Shown piece after piece: positions 1 through 61,041 of a stretch of 64,000 bases of DNA. The DNA is taken from the NCBI GenBank assembly GCA_002269645.1, contig NIVC01000001.1:1860001-1924000 (forward strand), written 5' to 3'. Below the pieces are notes generated by a model. That model was given only the letters and a program-made list of their open reading frames with translations, had not been told where the DNA came from and did not search any database. Made by a program: the position numbers and the translations under genes. The first letter of the stretch is position 1; each line of letters begins with the position of its first letter. Source of the stretch: Macrostomum lignano. Taxonomy: Eukaryota.

Positions 1-2
1 AC

Positions 3-3000
3 CTGGCTGTACCAGGGCAGCGGCAGCGCGGCCTGCAAGTCGCCGCTCTGACAGGCAATCAGTACAATATGAGACAGCGAGCCGCAGCGGGCAAATTCTC
101 GAGCCAAAGCCAACGACAGGCCGCCATTGACGCTGTGCGTTTGCACCTGCTGTCGCTCGTAGTGCAGACCGCTGTGCACGGTTAGAAATTCGTCGTTTAA
201 ACTCAGCACGTATGGCGAGGCGCAGGCCAAGGCCAGGGTGTTGGAGTCCAGCTGCAGAGGCGGCCGGCGAGAGCTGCCGTCTTTGGCGCTGACAAATATT
301 CCCAGATTGTTCATGCCGGTCACTAGGAATTCGCCCTGCGCGGAGTGAACATTTTCTCATCAGTACTACTGTAAGTAGGGTGAATAAAACTCAGGATATT
401 TTCTAGTCAATTTTTGTGCCTAATGTGCCACTTGTGGTGCTCAATGTAGGCATTAGCGCTTATTGTGGCGCTCCATTACTGCTAGATATGGCGCTCATTG
501 TGGAGCTCCATTACCGCTAGATGTGGCGCTCCATTACCGCTAGATGTGGTGCTTATTGTGGAGCTCCATTACCGCTAGATGTGGCGCTTATTGTGGAGCT
601 CCATTACCTCTAGATGTGGCGCTTATTGTGGAGCTCCATTACCGCTAGATGTGGCACTTATTGTGGAGCTCCATTACCTCTAGATGTGGCGCTTATTGTG
701 GAGCTCCATTACCGCTAGATGTGGCGCTTATTGTGGAGCTCCATTAACGCTAGATATGGCGCTCCATTACCACGAGATGTGGTCCTTATTGTAACGCTTT
801 AGTTACCGCTTGGTTTGCGCAACGCCTTTTAAATTTGTTGCTCAATAAGCCCAGCTGAATATATACTAGTCTATGACATAATAGTGCCACGAAAAATGTA
901 CATAAAATAGTCTCGCAGTACGTCGCCTATCAAACATAAACGTACAGGACGGCACGAAGCCACCACCTGCTGCAGGAATTCAATGTCAAAAAATTACTAT
1001 TGGAGAAAATAAACTAAATATGCAGCTGATGCACGTCGCATTTGCCGAAGAGAGCAAAAACTGCTATTTATTTCTGGAGTTTGGAATACAATAATAACTA
1101 AGAATGGCTCAGACTTCACCTTTCATGAATAAAAGTTTGTCAACTTTTGGAATTGTTTCTCTTTTTCAATTATGTTTATGTCTTGATGCCGCTGTTTCGA
1201 ATACTCGTAAAATCTCTAAATTTCTGTTCGAAGCAGCCGATATGCAATTTTCGTTCACTAACAAAATCAATAAAAAATCAAAGCCCAGCAACTGAGGATC
1301 TGGGAGGCTGGCCTAGCAACTGCGGATCTGGGAGGCTGGCCTAGCAACTGCGGATCTGGGAGGCTGGCCTAGCAACTGAGGATCTGGGAGGCTGGCCCAG
1401 AAACTGAGGATCTGGGAGGCTGGCCCAGCAACTGCGGATCTGGGAGGCTGGCCCAGCAACTGAGGATCTGGGAGGCTGGCCCAGAAACTGAGGATCTGGG
1501 AGGCTGGCCTAGCAACTGCGGATCTGGGAGGCTGGCCTAGCAACTGCGGATCTGGGAGGCTGGCCTAGCAACTGAGGATCTGGGAGGCTGGCCCAGAAAC
1601 TGAGGATCTGGGAGGCTGGCCAAGCAACAGAGGATCTGGGAGGCTGGCCCAGAAACTGAGGATCTGGGAGGCTGGCCCAGCAACTGAGGATCTGGGAGGC
1701 TGGCCCAGAAACTGAGGATCTGGGAGGCTGGCCTAGCAACTGAGGATCTGGGAGGCTGGCCCAGAAACTGAGGATCTGGGAGGCTGGCCCAGCAACTGAG
1801 GATCTGGGAGGCTGGCCTAGCAACTGCGGATCTGGGAGGCTGGCCCAGCAACTGAGGATCTGGGAGGCTGGCCCAGCAACTGAGGATCTGGGAGGCTGGC
1901 CCAGCAACTGAGGATCTGGGAGGCTGGCCCAGAAACTGAGGATCTGGGAGGCTGGCCCAGCAACTGACACTCTGGGAGGCTGGCCACAAGACCAGATAGC
2001 AACACACACAAAGCAGTATAACTAAACCAACCTTCTCAACCAGCTCCACCAGCGGAGTCACCCGCTGTCCATCGTCAAGGGAGAACAGCTCCTGCTGCTG
2101 CTGGGTGCCGTCAGGAGCGCAATTCACAAGCAGGTAGCGGCTCCACAGGCCTACGCATAGCGCGTCACCGTCAACGCGCTGTTGCCATGGAAACGGAAAG
2201 TAAAGATGATCTTTAAATATCATTTCAGCATACGGCTCAAGCAGATACAAAGCAGGCATTTGCAGAGTTACAGTCAGCACTCACAAAACTCAGCGGCACT
2301 TCGGGCAGAGAAATTTCCCGAATCAGCTGCGGCTTTGAGTCGCCAAGTTGAAGCAGCACGATTGTCTTCTTTTTCGTGCCAATGTACAGCTGCGGGTTTA
2401 GCAGTATGAATGAAAGCGTTTGTAGTGATACGAAAAGACAAGGGATCAGCGATGCAACATCAGAAATAAGTTCAAAGTAGTGGTAAATTTCTGGATTGAT
2501 ATTTTAGAGTGACTAGAGTTCCGCGTGACAATAGTTCGGAGTGACTATATTTTAGAGTGCCTATGGTTTGGCGTGACAATGGTTCGGAGTGGCATGGCTC
2601 GGAGTGACATGACCCGGAGTGACAATAGTTCAGAGTGACAATGCTCGGTCGGAGTGGCAATAGTTCAGAGTGACAATGCTCGGTCGGAGTGACAAGAATT
2701 CGGAGTGGCAATAGTTCGGAGTGACAATGCTCGGTCGGAGTGACAAGAATTCGGAGTGGCAATAGTTCGGAGTGACAATGCTCGGTCGGAGTGACAAGAA
2801 TTCGGAGTGACAATAGTTCAGAGTGACAATGCTCGGTCGGAGTGACAAGAATTCGGAGTGGCAATAGTTCGGAGTGACAATGCTCGGTCGGAGTGACAAG
2901 AATTCGGAGTGGCAATAGTTCGGAGTGACAATGGTTAGTATTTGGAAAACAAAAGCTACCGTACAAAACCTAATGATTAAATGACAAGAATTACTGCTCA

Positions 3001-7224: not shown

Positions 7225-8169
7225 TTCGTCGATTGTTTCTTCTTAGCTATTCCTATAGCCCAAGTTTTAGGTTAGGCTTACTCTTATCTGGTAAAATTAA
7301 TTCTAGGCCTTTGGATATGTTAATAGGCCTACGGAATTAGCGTAACTGCTGAAGACTGAGGCGGATACGACCTACAACGCGGCGACGCCAAATAATGATC
7401 GTTTAAAATTTGCTTTATTAGGATCTTCTCTAGTAGACAAGACAAATTATGTTTCTAGATGGAAACAAAAACTTTTGTTATTTTCGTACGCTGCAAGCCT
7501 GCAATACTTTATACAATCGTGAGTTGTGACAAACGGCTGTGCTGTGGTCCTGTGGTGTATCGTCGGGTGCGACGACCGCGTATATGGAATATTTCATAGC
7601 TAATTTTTTATTTCTGCGAAACGATTTTTTGTGTTAGTAGCGGCATGTCAACTGTATTTATAACAGCATTATATATTATTCCAATGGTGTATTCTGGTTT
7701 CATTACTTTTTAAGGAATCTTACATTAAAATATTAAAAACTATTCCTCTGAGCAATTTTTTTAGAAAATATCACTAACAGTGCAAGATAAACGATGCTGA
7801 AGTGTACAGTCACCTCCCACATACAAGTGTGGTAACTTGAGGCTGAAGTAAGTTAAGTCAAATTAACTTCAGTTATAGTCCTCGCTCGCTACAACGCTAC
7901 AGTGATCTATGTGTAGCTAATGCATGTGCAGTTCGATGCCGTAGTAATGAAGATTTCCATCGCATACATGCTATAACCCGCGGTTCTATGCTAGTTCTTC
8001 GGTTCTAAGTGGAATATAAATGCATGCATGCACATGCACTTCCGTTAATTATCAAAAAGTCTCGAACTCTAACCTGCTGTACGTTTCCTATAACCTAAAT
8101 GGTCATTGTAGTAAATTCATCGATTAATATTTATAACACACAACAAGCGGTTACATGTACATCATGCAG

Positions 8170-13525: not shown

Positions 13526-16500
13526 ATGGCCACTATCAGATTCAATGACCAGGATTACAGGGTAAGCAGCTTTAGCTATTGTAGTACATATAAATCACCA
13601 TCTTGATTGCCGACTTCATCATGTGCGATAGCGTCTTTGCGTGCACTTTTGGGTTAGTTATAGCTAGCTTGGAAATTCTGTGCTAGAAGAAGAAAGTTCA
13701 CTCCCTCACAAATATACTTTAGGGTTTGATTCCGCAGTAGTTTGGGGGCCAACCCTAAAATGTACAGAATGTGTACACTGACTGCAACAATGAGAAAGTC
13801 AGGGCACCCGCTGTACAGCATGTGTGAGCCCATGCTCAGGAGTCAGCAGAACGGGCATCACTGAATGCATTTGCCTCCTCACTCGCTACCCAATGCCAAA
13901 GCTAAAACTGCTCGTTTCACTCAACAGCGGCTGCACCGCGAGCTGATCCGCGAGCAGCGCAAGTTCGTCGACCCCACATTTCCGCCGGAAGCGTCCAGTC
14001 TGGACGCCAACAACCGCGGCTCAGACATCGAGTGGCGCCGTCCGACCGAGCTGGTCAGCAATCCACACCTGGTGGTTGACGGTGTCAGTGGCTCCGACGT
14101 GATGCAGGGCGAACGCGGCAACGCATGGTTCGTGACGGCCTCGGCCGCGCTGACCTCGAGGCCCGGGCAGCTCAACAGCGTGCTGCCCAACTGGACTCAG
14201 CAAGACTACGGCGATGATTTTCATCCGGGAATATTTCGCTTCTTGTTCAGCAGGCATGGCGGCCTCTACGAGGTTGTCATTGATGACCTGCTGCCGACGC
14301 GGAAAGGCCGTCTGGTCTACGCGCATTCCTGCGAGGAGAACGAGTTCTGGAGCGCTCTACTTGAGAAAGCCTACGCTAAGTCAGTTTTTGTTTAATGATC
14401 AAGGCGTTGCTTTTTATTGTCTGGAAATTCTACGCCCTCGAAACCCCACTAGCCCCAGCCCCTCTCAAACCCCACTAGCCCCAGCCCCTCTCAAACCCCA
14501 CTAGCCCCAGCCCCCTCTCAAACCCTACTAGCCCCAGCCCCCTCTCAAACCCCACTAGCCCCAGCCCCTCTCAAACCCCACTAGCCCCAGCCCCCTCTCA
14601 AACCCCACTAGCCCCAGCCCCCTCTCAAACCCCACTAGTCCCAGCCCCCTCTCAAACCCCACTAGTCCCAGCCCCCTCTCAAACCGCACTAGTCCCAGCC
14701 CCCTTTCAAACCCCACTAGCCCCAGTCCCCTCTCAAACCCCACTAGTCCCAGCCCCCTCTCAAACCACACTAGTCCCAGCCCCTCTCAAACCCCACTAGC
14801 CCCAGCCCCCTCTCAAACCCCACTAGCCCCAGCCCCCTCTCAAACCCTACTAGCCCCAGCCCCTCTCAAACCCCACTAGCCCCAGCCCCTCTCAAACCCC
14901 ACTAGCCCCAGCCCCCTCTCAAACCCCACTAGCCCCAGCCCCCTCTCAAACCCCACTAGCCCCAGCCCCCTCTCAAACCCCACTAGCCCCAGCCCCCTCT
15001 CAAACCCCACTAGTCCCAGCCCCCTCTCAAACCACACTAGTCCCAGCCCCCTTTCAAACCCCACTAGCCCCAGCCCCCTCTCAAACCTTACTAGCACCAT
15101 ACAGCCCCCCTCCCTCCCAAACCCTTACCAGCCGCAGCCACCTCAAGCACCTCCGGCCATTATTTTCCCAACACACCGCAATGCAACAGGATGCACGGAG
15201 ACTATGCCAGTCTCAGTCGAGGCCGCGTCGTAGACGCCCTGGCCAGTTTTGTTCGGGGCATCCCCGAGCACTGGGACTTGCGGAAGATGCGACAGCCTGG
15301 CGCTGAGAATGGGATAAATCCAGACAGTCCCGACGATCAGGCGCAGCTGGCTAAGCAATTTTACACTCATCTGAGCAGACGCTCTCTGATATTGTTCAGC
15401 TTGCAGGTAGGGGGACTGCGTAAATTATTCTCCTTCTCCATTGCCGCTACTATCTACTAACAGTAACAAACAAGTAACAAGAACAAATAACAGTAACAAA
15501 TAGTCTCTGGCCAAGTTCCGAGTACTCATACTCATACTCATAATCATAATCATAATCATAATCATAATCATAATCATAATCATACCCAAAATCGTAATCA
15601 TAATCATAATCATAATCATAATCATACTCATAATCACAGTCATAATCATATAATCATAATCATATTTCCGTAAGGACTGAGTCATCATTCTCAAACGCTC
15701 TAAAATTGAGAATTTTTGACCCCCCCCCCAAACAGCCAGACAACCGAACCACTCGCATGGGTGACTGGACCAAGGAGAGTCTCGTATACGGCCGAGGCTA
15801 CATCCTCACAGACATCCAGCAGACCAAGCTGAAGGACGGCAAGACCCCCGTGACGCTAATGAAGTTCCAGAATGCCTGGTTCGACATGGAGTGGACCGGA
15901 GCCTGGAGTGACGGGTATAAATAACTGTTCTCAACTTATTCCAGCTGACATATCCTGGTTGGCAACCAAACAAACTCTCATTTCAGCTCGCCAGAGTGGC
16001 GATCCGTTACTCTGGAGTTTAAGGACAAAATCGGGCTGGTGGACAGTAAAGACGGTATTTTCTGGTGAGCTTAACGACGAAATGACTAAAAAACTGCTCA
16101 CAAAGGGTTTTTGATATCTCTGGTTGGTGATATTTTGGGTTTGTAGTATTTCAGGTTTCTGATATTTCAGGTTTGTGATATTTTGGGTTGGTGATATTTC
16201 GGGTTGGTGATATTTCGGGTTGGTGATATTTCGGGTTTGTAGTATTTCAGGTTTGTGATATTTTGGGTTGGTGATATTTCGGGTTGGTGATATTTCAGGA
16301 TTTTGATATTTCGGGTTGGTGATATTTCAGGATTTTGATATTTCGGGTTAATGATATTTCGGGTTGGTGATATTTCGGGCTTGTGATATTTTGGGCTTGT
16401 GATATTTCGGGTCTGCTGTCTCTGACCCAAAGCCAAAGGATTTTGCTGTCAGAAGATCAACTCTTTAGGTCAAATGATTATCTGAAGGTCAACGCACCAT

Positions 16501-18772
16501 GACTACGATTGTATCGCGCCTGGAACTTCTCCCAGGATGAGCATCGGTGACGTCCTCAAGCAGTTCACGGATGTCGACATCTGCGTGGTCACCGCCGTTG
16601 GTAGCATCCGGTCTTGGCTAATTTACACCTTCCACAACGAGTGGACCGCCGAGCAGGTCGAAGGCGGCGGCGGCGGTGGCAGGCGGCGCAGCGTAGACTA
16701 CTCAGCTGGCGGCAGCTACGAGTACAAGGACACCTACGCCTCAAATCCGCAGTACCTGCTGAGCATACCCGGAGAAAATCCCAACAACGTGTCCTTCTAC
16801 CTGGAACAGGGCGACCCGTCAACCGCCTGCTTCGAGGACAGCCAGCTGGAGATCGGCATGGACCTGTTTCACATTGAAGTCAATCGGAAAAGTCGCATCA
16901 AAGCTGCGCCCCGCGAGGCCTGGCTGGCGCTTCGAGTCAAGCCGGAGAGGCAGCCGGGCGTGCTGATGAAGGCCAGACTCGAGCCTGGCAACTATTTGAT
17001 GATGCCGTGCACTAAGGAGCCTGGGCAGCAGCAGAACTTCACGCTTAGAGCATTCAGCCAGGACGACTATTCGATGACGTGAGGATAGAGAGAGGGATAA
17101 TAAAAGTGGGATAGAGAGTGGGATAGGAAATGGGGATAGGATTTGATTTAGATAGGGAGTGGGTTCGGGAGTATAATAAGCAGTGGGAGTGGAATAAGGA
17201 GTGGGATAGGGAGTGGGATAAGGTGGGATAAGGAGGGAATCGGAAAAGGACTGGGATAGGGAGTGGGATAGAAAATCTTACTTAATAAAGTTTTCTGCGA
17301 TACATATCGGCGCCATGAAACCCGCAGACTACTGCCAGATTTGGTGCCCCAACCCACGGGCACCTGCTCCTGCTGCGAATGGAATTTATTTGGCGTTACT
17401 CGCCTCATCGTCACCAAGGTGAAAGGCGTCAATTCCTACTTGAGAACGCAAGGTAGGGTGGTCATTGGGAATTCGTTCATTCAGACTTCTCCTAAATTTA
17501 TACTTTATGCGCATGATTAGCTACTTAATAAGTAGGGCTGAAAGAATATGATAAAATTCACACATACAGGCCTGCTCGCCAGTGTCCGGATTGACTGCGA
17601 AGCCTCAGACCTGGTGAACGCCCAGAGCGGATTCGTGTACGAAGACAAGAAAGAGAAGGACACGTTCTACGTGGACTTCAAAGTGCTGCTGTATAGACAC
17701 CAGCTGCTTGACCCCATAGATATTGAGGTGAGGACTGCGGTATTTTGTACACATTGTAGAGTGATGTAGTGCCACCTGTTAGATAGGTTAGTGTCACCTG
17801 TTAGATAGGGTAGTGTCACCTGTTAGATAGGGTAGTGTCACCTGTTAGATAGGGTAGTGTCACCTGTTAGATAGGGTAGTGTCACCTGTTAGATAGGGTA
17901 GTGTCACCTGTTAGATAGGGTAGTGTCACCTGTTAGATAGGGTAGTGTCACCTGTTAGATAGGTTAGTGTCACCTGTTAGATAGGATAGTGTCACCTGTT
18001 AGATATGGTAGTGTCACCTGTTAGATAGGGTAGTGTCACCTGTTAGATAGGGCAGTGTCACCTGTTAGATAGGGTAGTGTCACCTGTTAGATAGGGTAGT
18101 GTCACCTGCTATAGATAGCGTAGTGTCACCTGTTAGATAGGGTAGTGTCACCTGTTAGATAGGGTAGTGTCACCTGCTATAGATAGGGTAGTGTCACCTG
18201 TTAGATAGGGTAGTGTCACCTGTTAGATAGGGTAGTGTCACCTGCTATAGATAGGGTAGTGTCACCTGTTAGATAGGGTAGTGTCACCTGTTAGATAGGG
18301 TAGTGTCACCTGCTATAGATAGGGTAGTGTCACCTGTTAGATAGGGTAGTGTCACCTGTTAGATAGGGTAGTGTCACCTGCTATAGATAGGGTAGTGTCA
18401 CCTGTTAGATAGGGTAGTGTCACCTGTTAGATAGGGTAGTGTCACCTGTTAGATAGGGTAGTGTCACCTGCTATAGATAGGGTAGTGTCACCTGTTAGAT
18501 AGGGTAGTGTCACCTGGTTAGTCAGGTTTTAGCCAGTCTCAACAGAATGTGAGAATCAGAATGTCAGAACGTCAGAACTCAATCCGATCCCGCAGGTGTA
18601 CAGCCAATCGGCAATTTCGTTCACCAAAAAATTTGTGGGCACAGCGGCCATCATAGACAAAGACTGCGTTGAAGAGACCCCCAAGGAGGCGCTGCTGTCA
18701 CGCAACGGTAAACAGGTGCCTGTGAAGCTCTACTGCACTGTGCAGTCGGCCAGAGATATCGATTTCTTCTGA
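13526..18772 (+). CDS. CAPN5: Calpain-5/6 (Tra-3-type) family protein with CysPc, calpain domain III and C-terminal C2 domain; predicted catalytically inactive; 654 aa
   Basis: Nine exons: 13526-13561, 13928-14379, 15190-15406, 15736-15914, 15987-16064, 16536-17078, 17328-17452, 17570-17727, 18596-18772 (1965 nt, phases consistent, all GT-AG). Motifs FVDPTFPP, WRRP, QGERGNAWF, VVIDDLLP, EFWSALLEKAYAK, EWTGAWSD, DGIFWM, NPQY. The symbol denotes the family; orthology was not tested. Confidence 0.9.
14445..15100. repeat. 27-nt minisatellite (CCCCACTAGCCCCAGCCCCCTCTCAAA), calpain intron 2
   Basis: Tandem units; the GLGLVGFER 9-aa periodicity in the ORF track confirms period 27. Confidence 0.95.
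15520..15665. repeat. (ATCATA)n, calpain intron 3
   Basis: Direct reading. Confidence 0.9.
16100..16410. repeat. 16-nt minisatellite (GGGTTGGTGATATTTC), calpain intron 5
   Basis: Period 16 (16201, 16217). Confidence 0.9.
17085..17272. repeat. Degenerate purine-rich GGGATAGG(A)GT repeat, calpain intron 6
   Basis: Recurring GGGATA about every 10-20 nt. Confidence 0.7.
17770..18515. repeat. 22-nt minisatellite (GTGTCACCTGTTAGATAGGGTA), calpain intron 8
   Basis: Period 22, about 33 copies. Confidence 0.95.
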
Positions 18773-18954
18773 TTAAACGGACTGATGATGGAAACTTCTG
18801 CGCTGTGGCATTGATTTTATTTTTTATTTGGATAAACCTTAATAGGAACTTTATGAGCCGTAGAAACGAGAAAATACCAGGCAGCGCTGGTGCAATCTAC
18901 TTTTGCAATTTGGAAGGCATCATACCTTTGTTACCTTATTATTGTAAGGAACCT

Positions 18955-20540
18955 AGGGATAGACTTGTCAGACACCCATGGATAGACTTGTCAGACACCC
19001 AGGGATAGACTTGTCAGACACCCAGGGATAGACTTTTCAGACACCCAGGGATAGACTTGTCAGACACCCAGGGATAGACTTGTCAGACACCCAGGGATAG
19101 ACTTGTCAGACACCCAGGGGTAGACTGGTTAGATACCCAGGGATAGATTGGTCAGACACCCAGGGATAGATTTGTCAGACACCCAGGGATAGACTTGTCA
19201 GATACCCAAAGATAAACTGGTCAGGCACCCAAAGAGAAACTGGTCAGGCACACAAAGATAAACTGGTCAGGCACCCAAAGATAAACTGGTCAGGCACCCA
19301 AGAATAGACTGGTCAGACACCCAAGGGGTAGACTTGTCAGACACCCAGGGATAGACTTGTCAGACACCCAGGGGTAGACTGGTCAGACACCCAGGGATAG
19401 ACTTGTCAGACACCCAGGGGTAGACTGGTCAGACACCCAGGGATAGATTTGTCAGACACCCAGGGATAGACTTGTCAGATACCAAAAGATAAACTGGTCA
19501 GACACCCAGGGATAGACTTGTCAGACACCCAGGGATAGATTTGTCAGACACCCAGGGATAGACTTGTCAGACACCCTGGAATAAATTGGTCAGACTCTCA
19601 GGGATAGACTGGTCAGACACCCAGGGATAGACTTGTCAGACACACAGGGATAGATTGGTCAGACACCCAGGGATAGACTGGTCAGACACCCAAAGATAAA
19701 CTGGTCAGACACCCAAGAATAGACTGGTCAGACACCCAGGGATAGACTTGGTAGACTTGTCAGACACCCAGGGATAGACTTGTCAGACACCCAGGGATAG
19801 ACTTGTCAGACACCCAGGGATAGACTTTTCAGACACCCAGGGATAGACTGGTCAGACACCCAGGGATAGACTGGTCAGACACCCAGGGATAGACTTGTCA
19901 GACACCCAGGGGTTGACTGGTCAGACACCCAGGGATAGACTTGTCAGACACCCAGGGATAGACTTGTCAGACACCCAGGGATAGACTTGTCAGACACCCA
20001 GGGATAGACTTGTCAGACACCCAGGGATAGACTTGTCAGACACCCTGAAATAGATTGGTCAGACACCCAGGGATAGACTTGTCAGACACCCAGGGATAGA
20101 CTTGTCAGACACCCAGGGATAGACTTTTCAGACACCCAGGGATAGACTGGTCAGACACCCAGGGATAGACTGGTCAGACACCCAGGGATAGACTTGTCAG
20201 ACACCCAGGGATAGACTGGTCAGACACCCAGGGATAGACTTGTCAGACACCCAGGGATAGACTTGTCAGACACACAGGGATAGACTTGTCAGACACCCAG
20301 GGATAGACTTGTCAGACACCCTGGAATAGATTGGTCAGACACCCAGGGATAGACTTGTCAGACACCCAGGGATAGACTTGTCAGACACCCAGGGATAGAC
20401 TTGTCAGACACCCAGGGACAGACTGGTCAGACACCCTGGAATAGACTGGTCAGACACTCAGTGATAGACTGGTCAGACACCCAGGGATAGACTGGTCAGA
20501 CACCCAGGGATAGATTGGTCAGACACCCAGGGATAGATAG
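18955..20540. repeat. 23-nt minisatellite (CCCAGGGATAGACTTGTCAGACA) downstream of the calpain stop
   Basis: Period 23 (19021, 19044), about 1.6 kb long. Confidence 0.95.
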
Positions 20541-20804
20541 CCACAAATACAAGTTACCGCACGCATTAAAAATCACTAAACTTAACCGTCGCGTTTTTTG
20601 GCTTTAATTCCCCAGATTACACATACGTGTACGCGCTTGTATGATAGAAATGGAAAATATACCGCAATTTTCTTTGAGTGCTTTCACACAAGGACCATTA
20701 AAAGAAATGTACCTTCTAGTGGTCCTTGAGTGCACAGCTACTCTTTATATTGATTTTAAAATGTGTTCACCAGTGAACCCTAAATTAAATTCTAGAAAAG
20801 CAGA

Positions 20805-21012
<208 letters not shown>

Positions 21013-21260: not shown

Positions 21261-28351
<7,091 letters not shown>

Positions 28352-29257: not shown

Positions 29258-32200
29258 TGTAATTGCCTCGCAATATTATTATCAATTTGTTCTAAATAGG
29301 CGAGTGAGTTATATTATAAATGTACATCTTGTGTCGCATGAGTCATGTACGCCGTACGCGTAAAACCTCAAATATATATATCGCTAACCTGGCCAGTTAG
29401 GGCCCCATGCTTGATTTTCTCGCTCAGCTTAACACGCGGCCTTGAGACTTTACAGTGGCGTCGCAAGCAAGCCCACTTTGTCCAGTCACTCATGGCTCAA
29501 TTCATCTCACTGCCACCCCCTGAGCAATTCAGCACTAGTGCAGATCAACAGAATGCCGGTAAACGCTGGAACAAATGGTCCGATCATTTTTGTGACTTTA
29601 TCGAAGCGTCAGGCATCAAAGACGAAACTCAGAAGTGCAAGCTCCTGGCCTACACGGCCGGCAGAGAAATCGCGCAAATCATTAAAGACCTGCCAGATGA
29701 CAAGAAAGACAGCCTCGAAACTCTGCTCGCAGCAATAAAAGAGCACTTCAAGGAGCGCAACAACATCGTATTTGCCCGCTATCAGTTTCGTCTATGCGTT
29801 CAGCAAACCGGAGAGCCAGTGGACTCCTGGTACTCCCGACTCAACTCAGCGGCCGAGACATGCGAGTTCTCAGCACTCAAGGACTCCCTAATCAGAGATC
29901 AGATAGTGGCGACATGCTGCTCCGATAAACTTCGGCGAAGATTGCTGCAGGAGTCCAACATCTCTCTCGGCGATGCGTTGAGACAAGCGCGCGCGTTTGA
30001 AGCAGCAGAAGAGCAGGCCACGGCCATTGAGAACTCCAGTAGCATCGCAGCAGTGCACAGAGCGGCACCGAAGCAGTTCAGAGACAGCGGAACGCGCCCG
30101 AACAGTCAGCGGGTCCCTGGCGGCCAAGCAAACAGCGGCCCAACCAGCTGCTATCGATGCGGCGAACGCGGGCACAGCTCATGCAACGCGGCAAAAGGCA
30201 AAACCTGCCTGGCATGCGGCAAGCCAAACCATCTCGTCAAAGCATGCAGACAACGCAGGCCTCAAACAAGCTCCAGCATCAACGCCGTAGCGGACAAAGA
30301 AGCTGAGGAGGTCTTCATCGATCACGATTCGCTAAATGAGGAGGCCTTCACTATCCAGTCGCAAAAAACGGCACCTAGACGCAACTCCGCCAACACTAAT
30401 CTGAGGATCGAGGGCAAGGACTTCATCGTACTCGTGGATAGTGGAGCCAGTTGCAACGTCATGAGCGAGGAGAACTTCCGGCGGCTAAGAAATGTTCGAC
30501 TGCGCAGCGCCATCCATCCAATTTTCAGCTACGGGTCCACAACGCCTCTCCAAGTCCTGGGTGTCGCTGACCTCAACGTGAGCACCGCAGCTAGCAGACA
30601 ACTAGCTTCATTCTACATCACCAAAGGCTGTGGAACCACACTACTCGGTCGAGAAACCGCTTTCAACATGGGAATTCTGCACATCCAACATCCAACAGTT
30701 GAAGTCAACTCGGTGCAGCCCACGGAAAATCTAGCCGCATCAGGTATTCAAGAGCTGTTCTCCAAGTACAGAGATGTCGACCAAGATCTTCCAACCGAAC
30801 TCCGCATCAGCAGCATCCTTGGTGAGTTTCAGTCAATCTTCGAAGGCCTTGGCTGCGTTAAGGGCGTCGAGGTCGACGTTCGTCTTCGACCAGAAGCTGT
30901 CCCAGTCTGTCACCCACCCTCCAGAGTTCCCGTCCACCAGCGGTCGGCGGTCATCGCGGAACTTCAGGCTCTGCTCGACCAAGGAATCATCGAGCGCGTC
31001 AACGGCCCGTCACCGTGGGTCTCCCGCATGGTTGTCGTCCCGAAAGAAGGCGGTGGCATCCGCATCTGCCAAGACCTGCGCGACGTCAACTCATTTGCCG
31101 TGCCAGAAAAGCAGCCCATCCCAACCTTTGAAGAGATCACGGACGAAATGGCGGGTTCCACGGTATTCAGCGAGCTCGACATCGTAAAGGCTTTCCACCA
31201 AATTCTTGTCAAACCGGAATCCCGTCACGTCTTCACCTTCAGCACCCCACTGGGTCTCATGCGACTGACCAGACTCAGCATGGGATTCACCAACGCATCC
31301 GAGATATTGCAAAGGGTTATGACAGGCGTCCTGAGCGGCCTTGACGGTGTCCGATGGGCACACGATGACATCACCGTCTTTGCGAGCACGATGGAAGAGC
31401 ACAACATCCGACTAAAACAGTGCTTCAAGCGCCTACAAGACCATGGAATCACACTCAACCCGAACAAGTGTCGCCTGGCACAGCCTTTCATCGATTTTCT
31501 TGGTATGCGCATCAGCGCACGAGGCGTTCAGCCTGCAGCCGAGAAGATCAAGGCCGTCAAAGACTTTAAGGAGCCAACAAATGTGTCAGAGCTGCGCTCA
31601 TTCCTCGGTTTGGCCACCTACCTGTCCAGGTTCGTTCCGAACTTCTCAGATCTGACGCAGCCAATGCGAGAACTGTTAAAAAAAGGTCATAAATGGTGCT
31701 GGTCAGAAAGGCAACAAGAAGCATTCCTGCAAACAAGAGCAGCGATCTGCAAGGAGAGCGTCCTGGCCTTCTTTGACGTGAATCTCCCAACAGAAGTTCA
31801 TGTGGACGCCTCACCAGTCGGCCTGGGTGCCATTCTCAGCCAGGTGGATGAGAAAGGCGTTCGCAAACCGGTCGCCTTCGCCAGCAGGTCGCTCACGCCA
31901 GTTGAGCAGCGATACGCCCAAATTGAACGCGAGGCGCTTGCGGTGAAATTCGGGTGCCTACGTTTCGAGCACTACCTCAGCGGCTGCCCAGATCTCACAG
32001 TCATCACGGATCACCGCCCATTAGTCCCGCTTTTTCAACCTGGTTCCAGGCCTCCACCAAGGATTGAACGGATGGCTTTAAGAGTGCAGCACCTCAAATT
32101 CAAGCTCATCTATCAGCCGGGGCCACAGAATCCAGCGGATGTCCTCAGTAGACAACCTGAAATGCAGACAAAGGACAACCCCGGGGAACTCCTGGACAGA

Positions 32201-33823
32201 CGCTTCATCAACGCAGTCGCCATCGGCTCTACTCCGAAAGGACTGAACTTTGCAACAATTCAGGAGGCTTCAAAGTCAGACGGCACGATCCAAGCAGCTC
32301 TATCAGCTCTACGAACTGGCCAATGGGACAAGCAGAACAGAGAACTGCGAGCCTTGTCCTGCCTGCAGCAGGAGCTTTCAGAACATGACGGCGTGCTACT
32401 ACGGAGCTCGTTGATCGTGATCCCGAGCAGCTTACGTCGGACGGTGCTCCAGCTGGCACATGCAGGCCACCAATGCTGCCGAAAAACTATGGACAGACTG
32501 CAAACCAAAGTCTGGTGGCCAGCGATGAGAAGCGACTGCCAGGCGTTCGTCCAGTCTTGCCTTCCCTGTCAAGCGACATCGCCGAAGAGCCTCGCACCGC
32601 CACCACTCTCACCGTCGCAACTTCCGGACGGAGCATGGCTGGTTCTTGGAATGGACTTTTACGGCCCAGTCCAAGGGAAAATGCTCCTGGTGACAACCGA
32701 TCTGTTTTCAAAATTTCCCGAGGTCGACATAGTCAGCTCAACATCAGCAGAGGCAGTGCTTCCGCATCTCCGGACTCTGTTTAGCAGATACGGCATCCCG
32801 TTGGAAATCGTCAGCGACAATGGACCTCCGTTTAACTCGGCAGAATTCACAAACTTCCTCTCAGAGTTCGGCATCAAGCATCGCCGGATCTGTCCGCTGC
32901 ACCCCGAGGCGAACGGAGCGACCGAGCGAGTCAACAGGTGTATCAACAAGGTCATCAGAGCGGCCATCGCAGAAGGACGCAACTGGCGCACCGCACTCGA
33001 CGACTGGCTGCTCGCTCATCGCGTCACTCCGCACTCGGCAACCGGCGTGGCACCAGCCGAACTGCTCATGGGCCGAGCTCTCAACGACGGCCTCCCGTCA
33101 ATCCAACCATCGCAGCCTGTGCAGCACGACCGCGCCGAACTCGCAAAGCGCCACGAGGCCTACAACAACCAGATGGCAGCAGGTTTCAACCGCTCCAGGA
33201 GGGCCAAGGCAGCCAATGTCAAGCCGGGTTCGGCGGTTCTTCGCAAGCGGACGAGACGCACGAAAATTCAAACGCCTTTCGAGCTCGAACCCTGGACCGT
33301 CACCGACAGGCGAGGCGATTCCTACGTCCTGCGGCAAGGCGACTGGACATGCACTCGCCACCTGACGCACATCCGGCCTCTGACAGCGACCGAGGACCCA
33401 CCACCAGAAGCGGACGCCGGCGCCGCCTCGCCGGAGCGCGGCATTGCTGAGAGGCCGCACCCGAGAGCGGCCAAGGACAAGCCTATCAGCTACAGAGTTT
33501 GACGGGTTTTGACGGGTAACTGGTGCTAAGGGCTGAGACAAGTGTTTTTTTACCCTTAATGTTTTATTCCTTTTTCCTTATCTTTTTAATCCGCATTTTT
33601 GAGCTTTTTCGTTTTTTGGGGAGAAGTGTAATTGCCTCGCAATATTATTATCAATTTGTTCTAAATAGGCGAGTGAGTTATATTATAAATGTACATCTTG
33701 TGTCGCATGAGTCATGTACGCCGTACGCGTAAAACCTCAAATATATATATCGCTAACCTGGCCAGTTAGGGCCCCATGCTTGATTTTCTCGCTCAGCTTA
33801 ACACGCGGCCTTGAGACTTTACA
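29258..33823 (+). mobile_element. Full-length Ty3/Gypsy LTR retrotransposon (Mag-like), 4566 bp, with identical LTRs
   Basis: LTRs 29258-29454 and 33627-33823 (197 bp, TGT...ACA, identical by eye); 5-bp TSD CCAGC (29253-29257 and 33824-33828); PBS-like TGGCGTCGC at 29456; PPT GGGGAGAAG 33618-33626; one intact gag-pol ORF. Confidence 0.97.
29492..33502 (+). CDS. Gag-Pol polyprotein (Gag with Cys/His knuckle, aspartic protease, RT, RNase H, integrase), 1336 aa
   Basis: First ATG outside the LTR is at 29492. Motifs: CYRCG..H...C..CGKPNHLVKAC, LVDSGAS, RICQDLRDVN, AHDD, VDASPVGLG, YAQIEREAL, HAGH..C..C, GMDF, SDNGPPF, PEANGATER. Domain order PR-RT-RH-IN is that of Gypsy. Confidence 0.95.
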   Translation: MAQFISLPPPEQFSTSADQQNAGKRWNKWSDHFCDFIEASGIKDETQKCKLLAYTAGREIAQIIKDLPDDKKDSLETLLAAIKEHFKERNNIVFARYQFRLCVQQTGEPVDSWYSRLNSAAETCEFSALKDSLIRDQIVATCCSDKLRRRLLQESNISLGDALRQARAFEAAEEQATAIENSSSIAAVHRAAPKQFRDSGTRPNSQRVPGGQANSGPTSCYRCGERGHSSCNAAKGKTCLACGKPNHLVKACRQRRPQTSSSINAVADKEAEEVFIDHDSLNEEAFTIQSQKTAPRRNSANTNLRIEGKDFIVLVDSGASCNVMSEENFRRLRNVRLRSAIHPIFSYGSTTPLQVLGVADLNVSTAASRQLASFYITKGCGTTLLGRETAFNMGILHIQHPTVEVNSVQPTENLAASGIQELFSKYRDVDQDLPTELRISSILGEFQSIFEGLGCVKGVEVDVRLRPEAVPVCHPPSRVPVHQRSAVIAELQALLDQGIIERVNGPSPWVSRMVVVPKEGGGIRICQDLRDVNSFAVPEKQPIPTFEEITDEMAGSTVFSELDIVKAFHQILVKPESRHVFTFSTPLGLMRLTRLSMGFTNASEILQRVMTGVLSGLDGVRWAHDDITVFASTMEEHNIRLKQCFKRLQDHGITLNPNKCRLAQPFIDFLGMRISARGVQPAAEKIKAVKDFKEPTNVSELRSFLGLATYLSRFVPNFSDLTQPMRELLKKGHKWCWSERQQEAFLQTRAAICKESVLAFFDVNLPTEVHVDASPVGLGAILSQVDEKGVRKPVAFASRSLTPVEQRYAQIEREALAVKFGCLRFEHYLSGCPDLTVITDHRPLVPLFQPGSRPPPRIERMALRVQHLKFKLIYQPGPQNPADVLSRQPEMQTKDNPGELLDRRFINAVAIGSTPKGLNFATIQEASKSDGTIQAALSALRTGQWDKQNRELRALSCLQQELSEHDGVLLRSSLIVIPSSLRRTVLQLAHAGHQCCRKTMDRLQTKVWWPAMRSDCQAFVQSCLPCQATSPKSLAPPPLSPSQLPDGAWLVLGMDFYGPVQGKMLLVTTDLFSKFPEVDIVSSTSAEAVLPHLRTLFSRYGIPLEIVSDNGPPFNSAEFTNFLSEFGIKHRRICPLHPEANGATERVNRCINKVIRAAIAEGRNWRTALDDWLLAHRVTPHSATGVAPAELLMGRALNDGLPSIQPSQPVQHDRAELAKRHEAYNNQMAAGFNRSRRAKAANVKPGSAVLRKRTRRTKIQTPFELEPWTVTDRRGDSYVLRQGDWTCTRHLTHIRPLTATEDPPPEADAGAASPERGIAERPHPRAAKDKPISYRV

Positions 33824-35200: not shown

Positions 35201-38017
35201 AAAGCAGTTGACAGCGAGAGTAAGAATTGTTGACTTGGACTTTAGAGTGACTGCATGGGCGTGGGTATGCATGCAATGAAACCCGCGTGTTGAACCAAAT
35301 ATTAATTAGCTGACCGTTTCAAATTTCATCAAATGTCCTCAATTCCTGTCTTGATCCCTCTTAAAAAAGGATTGAGTTGAGAAGCTTTTTACAGTTCACC
35401 AAGCACCTTTCCCAACACTTAGGGGAATTCTCCCACAATACAAACTGAATTGAACCATCTATTGAAGAAGTACAACTCACATAATGTGGTCTCAACTGTA
35501 TACATGCAGCGCTTCGGTCGCATTTTTAATTAATTATGCATGCAGATTGGGTGAACACTTTTTGCGTAAAAATACGCAGATTAGGAAAGGTGTATCTACC
35601 TTGTATTTTAGCTCTGTAAATGTATATTAAATTAATGTGGTCTTTGAGGACATGCATGTACAAGAAAATGAAGGAAATGTATACTGTGTAATGTACGCAC
35701 CAAGGACTATACTTTATTAGAAGGACTTAACTATTTAATTGGTTTTGTATTTACATTATCCTACATATAAATATTGAGGGCCTAAAAATCTAAAAAATGG
35801 CACGGCTCGACGCCTTCGTTTCAAGAATCTGTTTTATCATTGTGTTACACATTTTGTCACACAGCCATAAGCTGAGATTTTGTGCTGAAAAAAACGGAAA
35901 AAACTGCTATCTCTGTAATGTATTCTTTTCTGTAAAACCTGCTTCCTTAAATTTCCAAGAAACTTACGGGCTCTAAAATTTTCCAAGAAACCTCGGCGCG
36001 CACGCGTACATACAATATATACACGCATAGTGTAACTCGGTCTAGGCCTATGTAGCTTACATTTACAACTACTTCTCTCAGCTGATAGTTGGGCAAAGCT
36101 TGTGATGTGACTGAGTGACCAAGGTAATGTTCCCTCGGTCTTAACCTGCGTCCCCTGGGTGCTTATTATACAGGTACACGCCAAAGGCGTGACAGCCATG
36201 CACTAGCCTCCTGCGTAAGAAAGTATACCCGGGAAAACTTTCGCTAATGAGACGGGGATCCAAGCCTGCTACGGGCAACGAATTTGGAGCCATATTTTCA
36301 AGTCGTAGTGCCGGCTGATCTAAGGGACTGCGAGGTGCCAATAAAGTAGCAATAGGCCAGGGGATTCTTATGACCTTGGATTGATCAGTGCGGTTGAGCA
36401 GGGCGGCTATATGCTATTCCTTGGTTTTCCAGGGTTCTGATTCTTCTGAGACAGATGCAGCGCTAAACTGAGATTTCCTCGTCAACTGGCCATTCATTTT
36501 CGATTGGCCAGTTAATTCATACATTTTCGATTAAGTATGAGCTATCCAGACTCCACAGTGATTCACGGTTGTCTCAGAGCTGTTTCTGTTAATTTCAGTT
36601 CGACACTGCACCGACACGACACTACATTGATATCCAATGATTATTCGTCAAAACGATGGCCAATAAGTTTGGAAACAAATGAGTTAAAAAGCACATGTTA
36701 AAAGCATAGAATGATTGCAAGCAACTTACCAGTAATTAGGTCTCTAGACCGACAGGTGAACTCTCGATGTGTTTGTGGCGGTACGGGCAATTCAAGGCGG
36801 CTTAGCCGCATGGGCACTGGCGTCGCTTGTTGTCGCGGAGGCGAGTCGAACTGATGTTTGGGATTGAGAGGCTGTTGTGGGGGTGGGTGATAAAGAAGGT
36901 CATATTGAGGACAACGAACTGCTTATATTCATGTAAAGAGCTGGAATCACGTCCCATGCGCGTGACTCATATGATGCATATTAGACCTTGAACTGCCCTG
37001 GGTCGGCGTCGCCAAGCAACCGAGTGACATCATTGCCCAGCCGTAACGTGATTGGCTATAAAAAGATAGGGTGGTGGGTGCGCGGTTTAGATAGGGAAAA
37101 TTAGGACATCATTATATGATTCACATGACTTGGGAAAAATGGATTGCAGGAGAGGGAGTTTATTGATGCGTTCCAGTTCAATGATTTTGAACAAAGAAGC
37201 GAAGGATTAGGTGGCCCGAAAGGGGAGTCATCCGATGAGCACCTGTGGAAGGGGCCTAGATATCTAGGGTTAGGATCGCGTTGGGCCGTGCAGGGGAAAA
37301 TATCAAAAGTATCACGAAAGTTTAATAGGGGCCTAGCACCGCTGTTGCACGGTCACATGTAACGTGTTTACGTTCAAATTTCAAGCGCACTTACGGGTGT
37401 CCTGATTGGCTAGAGGGTCCTGTCAGCATAAAACTCCATGGCCTGCCTTTTACATGTATACATGTAACTGTAGGCAGGGGGATTAATTTGGAGTTTGTTG
37501 AGTTTTGTACTACAATGTAGGACTTGTTGGTTTTATTAGTGTTGTATGTTTCTTTTTAGACGACATTATAATTTTATATTATAGAGAGTGTTAATTTTAG
37601 GAACAGAGAGACTTACACCATCAAAGTACTGGGTCGGCGTGGGCATCTATAACGCCATATTATCTGTGGACTCAAAGCTGTCCAATATTTCTTGACTGTG
37701 TTGCAGCAACTGCTGAGCAGTCTCTTTAGTTCTGCGGACATGCGTATGAGAAGACAGTTACTTAAGAATTTTTACGCAGTCTACATATTTGTGTGCTTTA
37801 GCGGTTTGATCAAATGTTTTAGTAGTCAAGTTAACTTTTGTTATGTTAAATGCTAAAGCGCATACACTATACTAATGTATATACTCGTACTAAAAAAGTC
37901 CTCGTTTGGATAAATTAATTTTTTTTAAAACTAATAAAAAACCAGCATTAAAAATGTAGTATTGCCATTTAGCTGGAGCATCCGTTCAAATTTATGCTTT
38001 ATAATATGTAGTACATC

Positions 38018-41878: not shown

Positions 41879-58466
<16,588 letters not shown>

Positions 58467-58475
<9 letters not shown>

Positions 58476-60735: not shown

Positions 60736-60868
60736 AGTCCCCAGTCTAAAAGAGTCCAGAGTCCTTAATTATTCTTAATGTGGTCCCAAATCAGTTCTTA
60801 GTTAGTCCTTAATGTGTCATAATATAGTCCCAAAGTTAATCCTCAATTTCCCATCCCGGAGTTTGCAG

Positions 60869-61009
60869 GCCGAGCCAGTAGAGGCGGACATCGAGGATCT
60901 TCTGAAGTTGGCGTCAGCTGACGATGATGCCGCAGTAGGCGAGTTCCAGCTTCGCCAGAGTCGCCGATCGAACGTCGTGGTGGCCCGGCCGAAGAGACTT
61001 CGACAGCAA

Positions 61010-61041
<32 letters not shown>

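What the first reader, a model, noticed from the sequence alone, without database searches (positions are those of the whole stretch)
13526..18772. Intact but catalytically dead calpain-5-type gene (Cys>Ala and His>Arg)
Seen: the nucleophile motif QGxxGNCWF reads QGERGNAWF (GCA at 14123-14125) and the GHAY motif reads GRGY (CGA at 15793-15795). The Asn is kept (QNAW, 15871-15873). All nine exons are open and in phase, giving 654 aa with domain III and C2. Established: calpains need the Cys-His-Asn triad, and vertebrate CAPN6 is a C2-type calpain that lost the Cys and works as a microtubule/cytoskeletal regulator. Inference: a probably independent invertebrate pseudo-calpain with a scaffold or dominant-negative role.
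Basis: partly seen in the sequence, partly recalled or inferred. Interest (0 to 1): 0.7.

Follow-up and report, generated by a model that had tools for sequence, protein, structure and literature searches.

The report
Catalytically dead calpain-5-type gene, flatworm
This is an intact, transcribed and selectively maintained gene of the flatworm Macrostomum lignano for a calpain-5/TRA-3-type protein that has lost its protease active site; inactive calpains are already known from many animals, so it is a new example of a known kind.

Summary
Nine GT-AG exons (13526-18772, + strand) give a 654-aa protein with Ala78 (GCA 14123-14125) for the nucleophile Cys, Arg255 (CGA 15793-15795) for the His, and Asn281 kept. 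The protein is identical to GenBank PAA94846.1 (BOX15_Mlig012140g1, "hypothetical protein") of Macrostomum lignano, whose annotation is RNA-seq derived.

It is not a decaying copy. Against a collinear paralogous locus, dN/dS is 0.083 overall and 0.032 in the dead protease core. A second M. lignano paralogue, only 41% identical, carries the same Ala and Arg, so the loss is old.

Assignment to the CAPN5/TRA-3 (C2-tail) subfamily rests on full-length best hits, a subfamily-specific HMM for the tail, an AlphaFold model, and 7 of 8 introns at subfamily-conserved positions and phases. Pfam's C2 model does not detect the tail, and the subfamily's long PC2L2 loop is missing.

The loss is independent of mammalian CAPN6. 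Other spiralians also have dead CAPN5-like paralogues. Whether the flatworm gene belongs to that clade is unresolved.

The best-supported mechanism is a non-cleaving, probably still Ca2+-responsive binding protein. This is inferred, not shown. Dead calpains are common, so interest is modest.

The parts
13526..13561 (+). Exon 1 (ATG; aa 1-12)
   Evidence: Donor GT follows. N-terminus matches PAA94846.1.
13928..14379 (+). Exon 2 (aa 13-163, phase-2 end): PC1 half of the protease core with QGERGNAWF
   Evidence: The intron after it (163/phase 2) lies at a position conserved in CAPN5-type genes.
14123..14125 (+). GCA = Ala78, in place of the nucleophile Cys (Cys115 of human calpain-1)
14096..14098 (+). 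GAC = Asp69, equivalent of Ca2+-site-1 ligand Asp106 (kept). Glu151 (14342-14344) is equivalent to Glu185 (kept).
   Evidence: Ligand identities are from established knowledge of the calpain-1 core structure.
15190..15406 (+). Exon 3 (aa 163-235)
   Evidence: The intron after it, 236/phase 0, is conserved.
15736..15914 (+). Exon 4 (aa 236-295): PC2 part with GRGY and QNAW
   Evidence: The intron after it, 295/phase 2, is conserved, including in Trichoplax.
15793..15795 (+). CGA = Arg255, in place of the catalytic His (His272 of calpain-1)
15871..15873 (+). AAT = Asn281, the retained third triad residue. Trp283 is also retained.
15889..15912 (+). Glu287 (15889-15891) and Asp294 (15910-15912), equivalents of Ca2+-site-2 ligands Glu302 and Asp309 (kept)
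15987..16064 (+). Exon 5 (aa 295-321). Asp317 (16051-16053) is kept. Ile319 (16057-16059) replaces the Ca2+/switch residue Glu333.
16536..17078 (+). Exon 6 (aa 321-502): end of the core, a Gly-rich disordered linker (aa 363-373) and the CBSW/domain III (Pfam aa 376-494 = 16699-17055)
   Evidence: pLDDT <50 at 363-373. Three-codon indel versus L001.
17328..17452 (+). Exon 7 (aa 502-544): start of the C2-like tail
17570..17727 (+). Exon 8 (aa 544-596): C2-like tail
18596..18772 (+). Exon 9 (aa 597-654 and TGA at 18770-18772): end of the C2-like tail with the subfamily's C-terminal motif (..VQSARDIDFF)
14441..15099 (.). 27-bp minisatellite (24.6 copies) filling most of intron 2. Similar arrays lie in introns 5 (16106-16412) and 8 (17766-18521).
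   Evidence: Copy number differs from the paralogous locus.

Best explanation
The window carries Mlig012140.g1 of Macrostomum lignano. It is one of three near-identical copies of a calpain of the CAPN5/CAPN6/TRA-3 architecture (protease core PC1-PC2, CBSW beta-sandwich, C-terminal C2-type beta-sandwich, no EF-hand domain). The nucleophile Cys is Ala and the general-base His is Arg, so it cannot act as a cysteine protease. It is a pseudo-protease, not a pseudogene: it is transcribed, spliced as modelled, and under strong purifying selection, strongest in the dead core itself. The catalytic loss predates the split from a second M. lignano paralogue that is only 41% identical, and it is independent of the loss in mammalian CAPN6. 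The most likely mode of action is inferred, not shown. The protein keeps the calpain fold. It keeps five of six acidic Ca2+-ligand positions of the core, the oxyanion Gln and the active-site Trp. It would therefore still bind Ca2+ and partner or substrate-like proteins in the former cleft without cutting them, acting as a Ca2+-responsive adaptor or scaffold in the manner of CAPN6, or possibly as a competitor of active calpains. My confidence is about 0.9 for 'maintained dead CAPN5-type calpain' and about 0.5 for the Ca2+-responsive binding mechanism. The figure given is a blend of the two.
For: Gene model and codons. Triad equivalence. Identity to PAA94846.1. That annotation derives only from RNA-seq/transcriptome assemblies (PMC5730564). 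Selection against the collinear paralogous locus L001 (~90% nt identity in the non-coding flanks; 87.5-97% in the introns): 27 synonymous versus 8 non-synonymous differences, dS 0.064, omega 0.083, binomial P = 1e-11. By domain, omega is 0.032 in the core, 0.048 in C2 and 0.35 in CBSW. Old paralogue P0005 with ..ERGASAWF.. and ..VYGRGY... Architecture: Pfam; the tail HMM at 34.7 bits; AlphaFold pLDDT 85 and pTM 0.84; Foldseek match to the CAPN5 core 6p3q with TM 0.90 and rmsd 2.1 A, plus C2 domains at E~1e-4. Seven of 8 introns share alignment column and phase with CAPN5-type genes of an annelid and two gastropods, including three at the start of or inside the C2 tail (502/2, 544/1, 597/0); the partly resolved second annelid gene (Owenia A) shares the four core ones. 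Best database hits are all CAPN5-like over 93-100% of the length. Ca2+-ligand equivalents D69, E151, E287, D294 and D317 are kept in both divergent paralogues. Functional precedents for dead calpains: PMC3315469, PMC11387712.
Against: No experiment or expression pattern for this gene was found. The Glu333 equivalent is Ile (Val in the paralogue), so Ca2+ site 2 may be weakened. The C2 tail lacks the D-P-[YF] Ca2+-loop motif of its relatives and escapes Pfam C2. The PC2L2 loop shared by CAPN5 and CAPN6 is absent: His-to-Asn spacing is 26, against 31-41 in all but one of the CAPN5-type proteins compared (the dead Tubulanus protein has 28) and 24 in classical calpains. Neighbour-joining groups the flatworm clade with the classical outgroup at 86%, most likely long-branch attraction. 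The dN/dS estimate rests on 35 substitutions between recent paralogues, and gene conversion cannot be excluded.
Confidence: 0.65

Rival explanations
1. Dominant-negative or substrate-trap regulator. The dead cleft binds the same substrates, or the same partners, as active calpains and shields them from cleavage. This is a special case of the non-catalytic reading, not a contradiction of it.
For: The protease core is the most constrained part of the protein (omega 0.032). The oxyanion Gln72, Trp79, Asn281 and Trp283 are retained. The literature suggests Drosophila CalpC may control active calpains or act as a scaffold (PMC11387712).
Against: No active CAPN5-type partner of M. lignano was identified in any search. 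Arg255 and the Macrostomum-specific E74-R75 in the Cys loop change the cleft. Nothing here tests binding.
Confidence: 0.2
2. A decaying duplicate (unprocessed pseudogene) that happens still to be open.
For: The catalytic residues are lost. The lineage sits on a long branch (stem about 1 substitution per site). The genome is a recent polyploid with many redundant copies (PMC5730564).
Against: All nine exons are open in at least two independent loci, with identical splice sites. Omega is 0.083, P = 1e-11 against neutrality. The same Ala/Arg state is kept in a 41%-identical paralogue that is also open. The model is RNA-derived.
Confidence: 0.03
3. Sequencing or assembly error at the two codons; the real gene is active.
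For: None found.
Against: Cys to Ala (TGY to GCA) needs at least two base changes, and His to Arg one more. The same codons occur in L001. The same residues occur in P0165 and P0005, which come from other contigs or another assembly.
Confidence: 0.01
4. Not a CAPN5/TRA-3-type gene. Instead, a derivative of a classical or other calpain whose C-terminal domain only resembles C2.
For: The NJ tree joins it to the classical outgroup at 86%. The His-to-Asn spacing of 26 resembles classical calpains at 24. Pfam C2 is not detected. With core plus CBSW only and 71 backbone taxa, 24.5% of RELL replicates fall on non-Tra branches.
Against: The tail matches a Tra-C2 HMM end to end. No EF-hand or second Calpain_III hit appears. 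Intron positions and phases at the start of and inside the tail (502/2, 544/1, 597/0) coincide with CAPN5-type genes. ML placement on the full alignment puts 1.9% of RELL replicates on the classical-outgroup branch, and all six most frequent other placements lie inside the CAPN5-type set. The top full-length hits are all CAPN5-like.
Confidence: 0.07
5. Still an enzyme, using a different nucleophile or a different chemistry.
For: Reviews of pseudoenzymes (abstract of PMC10211241, listed) note that some have migrated catalytic residues.
Against: Position 78 is Ala, with no Cys or Ser nearby in the loop (GERGNAWF). The general base is also gone. Nothing in the alignment suggests a replacement pair.
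Confidence: 0.03

Closest known systems
Mammalian (eutherian) CAPN6
   Same: Same domain architecture (PC1-PC2, CBSW, C2 tail, no PEF domain). The nucleophile Cys is lost yet the gene is maintained. A non-proteolytic role in microtubule stability is cited in PMC3315469.
   Different: Independent event: vertebrate CAPN5 and CAPN6 form their own clade at 100% bootstrap. The platypus, bird, reptile, amphibian and fish CAPN6 proteins seen here still have Cys-His-Asn. From my own knowledge, CAPN6 has Lys at the Cys position and keeps His; here the residues are Ala and Arg. The PC2L2 loop shared by CAPN5 and CAPN6 (PMC7001764) is missing here.
CAPN5 / C. elegans TRA-3 (active C2-tail calpains)
   Same: Best full-length sequence matches at 30-35% identity over 93-100% of the protein. 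The core superposes on the CAPN5 core 6p3q at TM 0.90. Intron positions are shared.
   Different: Those proteins are active Ca2+-dependent proteases with Cys81/His252 (human CAPN5, PMC7001764). This protein has neither residue, and its C2 tail is much more divergent.
Dead CAPN5-like paralogues of other Spiralia ('clade B' in this report): Paralvinella and Dimorphilus (annelids), Haliotis, Babylonia, Batillaria, Nucella, Bradybaena and Physella (gastropods), Solemya (bivalve), Tubulanus (nemertean)
   Same: Same architecture. The Cys is replaced by a small residue (T, S, G or V, against A here). The His is often replaced by Q, L, R, Y or F. 'G-x-G-Y' stands in place of 'G-H-A-Y'. Tubulanus shares His to Arg. 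ML placement puts the flatworm clade in or next to this group, with RELL 0.72-0.94.
   Different: The flatworm protein lacks the clade's signature residues: the oxyanion Gln changed to E/P/T/N, the Asp331 equivalent changed to Glu, and Cys at position 104. It also lacks their PC2L2 loop. With more taxa it is drawn to a dead tunicate CAPN5-like protein, which shows that dead and long branches attract one another. The Owenia member of the clade keeps Cys and His, so the losses inside the clade are themselves multiple.
[quoted passage not shown]
   Same: Invertebrate calpains lacking triad residues that are retained. At least Rp-CalpA/B2 has a demonstrated developmental function (PMC11387712, PMC3315469).
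   Different: They belong to classical or nematode-specific calpain families, not to the C2-tail family.

Membership tests
Calpain superfamily (peptidase C2 / CysPc fold) | CysPc protease-core domain followed by a CBSW (domain III) beta-sandwich | tested here: met
   Pfam Peptidase_C2 E 4.6e-79 and Calpain_III E 4.6e-14. PDB calpains E 1e-66. AlphaFold/Foldseek TM 0.88-0.90 to calpain cores.
Active calpain proteases | Cys-His-Asn catalytic triad | tested here: not met
   Ala78, Arg255, Asn281.
CAPN5/CAPN6/TRA-3 ('Tra') subfamily | C-terminal C2 domain after CBSW; no penta-EF-hand domain | tested here: met
   No EF-hand hit. The tail matches a subfamily C2 HMM at 34.7 bits, E 6e-12. The AlphaFold model shows an eight-strand beta domain. 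Caveat: the generic Pfam C2 model gives no hit.
CAPN5/CAPN6/TRA-3 ('Tra') subfamily | Gene structure: subfamily-conserved intron positions and phases, including in the C2 region | tested here: met
   Seven of 8 introns coincide in alignment column and phase with Paralvinella, Batillaria and Babylonia genes, and four of them also with the partly resolved Owenia A gene. Classical calpain genes were not mapped, so the core introns may be older than the subfamily.
CAPN5/CAPN6/TRA-3 ('Tra') subfamily | Extended PC2L2 loop between the catalytic His and Asn (shared by CAPN5 and CAPN6, PMC7001764) | tested here: not met
   Spacing is 26 residues, against 31-41 in 26 of the 27 Tra-type proteins compared (the dead Tubulanus protein has 28) and 24 in classical calpains. 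I read this as a secondary deletion, because the dead Tubulanus protein is also shortened.
CAPN5/CAPN6/TRA-3 ('Tra') subfamily | Phylogenetic placement inside the subfamily | tested here: inconclusive
   NJ places it with the classical outgroup at 86%. My own ML placement puts it inside the subfamily: 1.9% of RELL replicates fall on the outgroup branch with the full alignment, and RELL on Tra-only branches is 0.755 with core plus CBSW only and 71 taxa. Long-branch effects are evident.
Vertebrate CAPN6 orthologue group | Membership of the vertebrate CAPN5/6 clade | tested here: not met
   The vertebrate clade has 100% bootstrap without it, and no ML placement falls there.
Spiralian dead CAPN5-like 'clade B' (defined in this report) | Signature residues (oxyanion Gln changed to E/P/T/N; Asp331 equivalent changed to Glu; Cys at position 104; G after the His position) | tested here: not met
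   Only the Gly after the His position (G256) and G244 are shared. Q72, D317 and G67 are not clade-B-like.
Spiralian dead CAPN5-like 'clade B' (defined in this report) | Phylogenetic placement in or at the stem of the clade | tested here: inconclusive
   RELL is 0.72-0.94 with 29 backbone taxa, including after removing +-6 residues around C, H and N. With 71 taxa, about 0.30 falls in or at the stem of the clade and about 0.69 if the two branches next to the dead tunicate sequence are added; that sequence is the best single placement.
Non-functional pseudogene | Disrupted frame or neutral evolution (dN/dS about 1) | tested here: not met
   The frame is open in all copies. Omega is 0.083.

The most novel reading that the evidence does not exclude
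Spiralian animals share an old second CAPN5-type paralogue. Its active site was already altered in the common ancestor: the oxyanion Gln is lost even in the Owenia copy that keeps Cys and His. It has since lost the Cys and/or His repeatedly and in different ways in annelids, molluscs, a nemertean and flatworms. The Macrostomum genes would be its most derived members. This would make it a spiralian counterpart of vertebrate CAPN6, a calpain paralogue whose main job was non-proteolytic before catalysis was lost.
Probability: 0.35. Interest if true: 0.45.

Novelty: new member of a known kind. Interest (0 to 1): 0.3.

Why it matters
Pseudo-proteases are a recognised but poorly understood class. 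CAPN6 is the only C2-tail calpain with a described non-proteolytic role. M. lignano has established RNAi and transgenesis. A dead CAPN5-type protein whose inactive core is under the strongest constraint is therefore a tractable way to ask what a calpain fold does when it cannot cut. The side observation may interest people who study calpain evolution: dead CAPN5-like paralogues recur across Spiralia with different replacement residues. Neither point overturns current understanding, because dead calpains are already known to be numerous and to have arisen many times.

Tried and rejected
- The first exon boundaries were off by one base and gave stop codons; corrected.
- The first alignment for a profile search used only exon 1 by mistake; redone as A2.
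- The NJ tree grouped the flatworm clade with the classical outgroup. I judged this long-branch attraction after ML placement, but it is kept as a rival.
- Diagnostic-column counting between clade B and other Tra calpains gave only 3-6 usable columns, too few to decide.
- The expanded ML placement drew the flatworm clade to a dead tunicate sequence. So I withdrew the initial idea that membership of spiralian clade B was established.
- Intron positions were mapped in the hope of separating clade A from clade B. Both share all 11 positions, so the test is uninformative for that question, though it supports subfamily membership.
- The Owenia B locus was truncated, and the Tubulanus and Babylonia B proteins were not on record.
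- The organism of the closest non-Macrostomum hit P0006 (Logan SRR24204647) could not be identified.
- Searches for expression data under Mlig012140 or Mlig011844 found nothing, in full texts and in the supplements of four M. lignano papers.
- Three profile or sequence searches and one exhaustive search found no close relative in any other flatworm.

Full report
**Observation.** The region 13526-18772 on the + strand holds nine exons: 13526-13561, 13928-14379, 15190-15406, 15736-15914, 15987-16064, 16536-17078, 17328-17452, 17570-17727 and 18596-18772. Each is bounded by AG and GT, and together they join in frame to 654 codons plus TGA. The motif QGERGNAWF has GCA (Ala78) at 14123-14125. GRGY has CGA (Arg255) at 15793-15795. 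QNAW has AAT (Asn281) at 15871-15873. In the HMMER alignment to full-length human calpain-1 (7x79_A), these residues face Cys115, His272 and Asn296. Pfam finds Peptidase_C2 (aa 25-337, E 4.6e-79) and Calpain_III (aa 376-494, E 4.6e-14) and nothing else.

**Whose gene it is.** The protein is identical to GenBank PAA94846.1, 'hypothetical protein BOX15_Mlig012140g1' of the flatworm Macrostomum lignano. Two further copies, Mlig011844g1 and g2 (651 aa, 98% identical), lie on other contigs. The deposited annotation of that assembly was built only from RNA-seq and transcriptome assemblies (PMC5730564). My independently derived nine-exon model equals the deposited one. That agreement is evidence that the gene is transcribed and spliced this way. 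I found no expression pattern or functional study for it.

**Not a decaying copy.** Locus L001 (NIVC01000583.1, Mlig011844g2) is collinear with window 8.5-28 kb. It is about 90% identical in the non-coding flanks and 87.5-97% identical in the introns. It has the same nine exons and splice sites. Between the two coding sequences there are 27 synonymous and 8 non-synonymous differences: dS 0.064, dN 0.0053, omega 0.083. The binomial probability of so few replacements under neutrality is 1e-11. By domain, omega is 0.032 in the protease core (2 versus 17 differences), 0.048 in the C-terminal domain (1 versus 6) and 0.35 in CBSW (5 versus 4). These counts are small. Codons 78, 255 and 281 are identical in both loci.

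A much older paralogue, UniProt A0A1I8IUE1 (P0005), is only 41% identical. It also reads ..SERGASAWF.. and ..LVYGRGY... The Ala/Arg state therefore long predates the recent polyploidy and has been kept in two diverging lineages. Sequencing error and recent pseudogenisation are both excluded for practical purposes.

**Which kind of calpain.** The best matches in 5.8 billion proteins are CAPN5-like or CAPN6-like proteins, at 30-35% identity over 93-100% of the length. An exhaustive HMMER scan of 1.84 billion representatives found nothing closer outside M. lignano.

The tail needs sensitive methods:
- Pfam's generic C2 model does not see aa 503-654.
- An HMM built from the tails of 27 non-Macrostomum CAPN5-type proteins matches it end to end, at 34.7 bits and E 6e-12, with shuffles at or below 0.4 bits.
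- AlphaFold2 with a 57-sequence alignment gives pLDDT 85 and pTM 0.84, with an eight-strand beta domain in the tail.
- Foldseek superposes the core on the human CAPN5 core 6p3q (TM 0.90, rmsd 2.1 A) and also finds C2 domains at E~1e-4.

Gene structure gives independent support. Seven of the eight introns fall in the same alignment column and phase as introns of CAPN5-type genes of Paralvinella, Batillaria and Babylonia, and four of them also in the partly resolved Owenia gene. These include 502/2, 544/1 and 597/0, at the start of and inside the C2 region.

Two features speak against a typical member. The long PC2L2 loop shared by CAPN5 and CAPN6 (PMC7001764) is absent: His-to-Asn spacing is 26, against 31-41 in all but one of the CAPN5-type proteins compared (the dead Tubulanus protein has 28) and 24 in classical calpains. 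The tail also lacks the D-P-[YF] loop motif of its relatives. I file the gene as a divergent CAPN5/TRA-3-type calpain.

**Relation to other dead calpains.** Among the 120 best hits of the first search, 110 have Cys-His-Asn. That group includes every non-eutherian 'calpain-6' in the list, from birds, a lizard, caecilians, fish and platypus. The vertebrate CAPN5/6 clade has 100% bootstrap and excludes the flatworm clade.

The gene is not alone, however. CAPN5-like proteins in several spiralians have T, S, G or V at the Cys position, and H, Q, L, R, Y or F at the His position, always in a 'GxGY' context. These come from Paralvinella and Dimorphilus (annelids), Haliotis, Babylonia, Batillaria, Nucella, Bradybaena and Physella (gastropods) and Tubulanus (nemertean). 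Solemya (bivalve) keeps Cys but has Tyr for His. Eight of them, together with an Owenia protein that keeps Cys and His, form a clade with 100% bootstrap. Even the Owenia member has lost the oxyanion Gln.

**Does the flatworm gene belong to that clade?** The evidence points both ways.
- For: my ML placement (BLOSUM62-derived rate matrix, gamma rates, fixed NJ backbone) puts it in or at the stem of the clade. RELL is about 0.9 with all columns, 0.74 without the active-site neighbourhoods, 0.72 for the core alone and 0.94 for CBSW plus C2.
- Against: it lacks the clade's signature residues.
- Against: with 71 backbone taxa, its best position becomes sister to a dead CAPN5-like protein of the tunicate Clavelina. 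That is a clear sign that dead, fast-evolving sequences attract each other.

I leave this open, at about 35-40% for membership.

**How it probably works.** Without a nucleophile and a general base, the protein cannot be a cysteine protease. This follows from established knowledge of papain-fold and calpain catalysis; Cys-to-Ser/Ala calpains are inactive (cited in PMC11387712 and PMC7001764). Several things are conserved instead:
- The fold.
- The oxyanion Gln72, Trp79, Asn281 and Trp283.
- The acidic residues equivalent to the Ca2+ ligands Asp106, Glu185, Glu302, Asp309 and Asp331 of calpain-1, which are kept in both divergent M. lignano paralogues. Glu333 is replaced by Ile or Val.

Purifying selection is strongest on the dead core. 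The most economical reading is a non-cleaving protein that still undergoes a Ca2+-dependent change and binds partners through the former substrate cleft and the C2 tail. That would be an adaptor or scaffold in the sense of CAPN6, or a competitor of active calpains. This step is inference by analogy, not demonstration.

**Comparison with what is known, and novelty.** Inactive calpains are well documented. A census of UniProt listed 344 calpain-like proteins lacking a triad residue, including CAPN6, CalpC, CLP-3 and CLPR-1..4 (PMC3315469). Dead calpains arose at least three times in insects, and one patterns the Rhodnius embryo. The same paper mentions several schistosome and nematode examples (PMC11387712). 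In my own scan, about 20 of the 145 nearest 50%-identity clusters have non-canonical triads.

The Aplysia calpain survey lists two Tra-type genes but does not comment on a dead one (PMC5650170). I found no description of the recurrent death of a spiralian CAPN5-like paralogue in the papers I searched, though that is a limited library.

**Verdict.** The finding is real and correctly described, but it is a new member of a known kind. Interest is 0.3.

Noticed in passing
window 29345-33502 (+): One uninterrupted 1385-aa Gag-Pol reading frame of an LTR (Ty3/gypsy-type) retrotransposon. It has aspartic protease, RVT_1, RNase H and integrase domains and a PNMA-like gag. It looks intact and potentially active.
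   Followed up: partly
window 14441-15099, 15520-15660, 16106-16412, 17766-18521, 18951-20537, 20801-21012, 21453-21854: Dense minisatellite and microsatellite arrays (units of 27, 6, 16/48, 22, 23, 4 and 34 bp) fill the calpain introns and the downstream spacer. Their copy numbers differ strongly from the paralogous locus L001: intron 2 is 810 versus 1200 bp, intron 5 is 471 versus 727 bp, and intron 8 is 868 versus 416 bp.
   Followed up: partly
window 27470-28351 (+): A long open exon with an Arrestin_C domain (E 3.5e-10). It is probably part of an arrestin-domain gene downstream of the calpain.
   Followed up: partly
window 55030-55584 and 56982-58475 (+): Exons of an oxysterol-binding-protein (OSBP/ORP) gene (Pfam Oxysterol_BP, E 1e-21 to 1e-27). 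The second exon's reading frame runs on into a repeat array.
   Followed up: partly
window 60812-63226 (+): Exons of a CDKAL1/MiaB-like radical-SAM methylthiotransferase (UPF0004 and Radical_SAM domains), interrupted by a proline/leucine/serine-coding repeat array.
   Followed up: partly
window 48600-50550 and 38000-48000: A ~2-kb low-complexity tract, open in three frames on the + strand (CT-rich by its translation, e.g. SVCLSVCL...), lies at 48.6-50.5 kb within a 48-52 kb stretch of AT skew about -0.65. Before it lies a 10-kb block of only ~30% G+C, in contrast with ~50% around the calpain gene.
   Followed up: no
L003 (Owenia fusiformis CAIIXF020000007.1): The gene caller lists two 624-residue calpain genes head to tail. 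tblastn shows exon 2 of P0089 lying in the 'second gene' at 7419-7553. So either the first intron is ~6.8 kb long or there is a tandem pair with mixed models.
   Followed up: no
P0004 (Prochilodus magdalenae, 974 aa): This high-scoring hit is a head-to-tail fusion of two classical calpain cores plus CBSW domains in one annotated fish protein. It is probably a merged tandem gene model, and its score is inflated by the duplication.
   Followed up: partly
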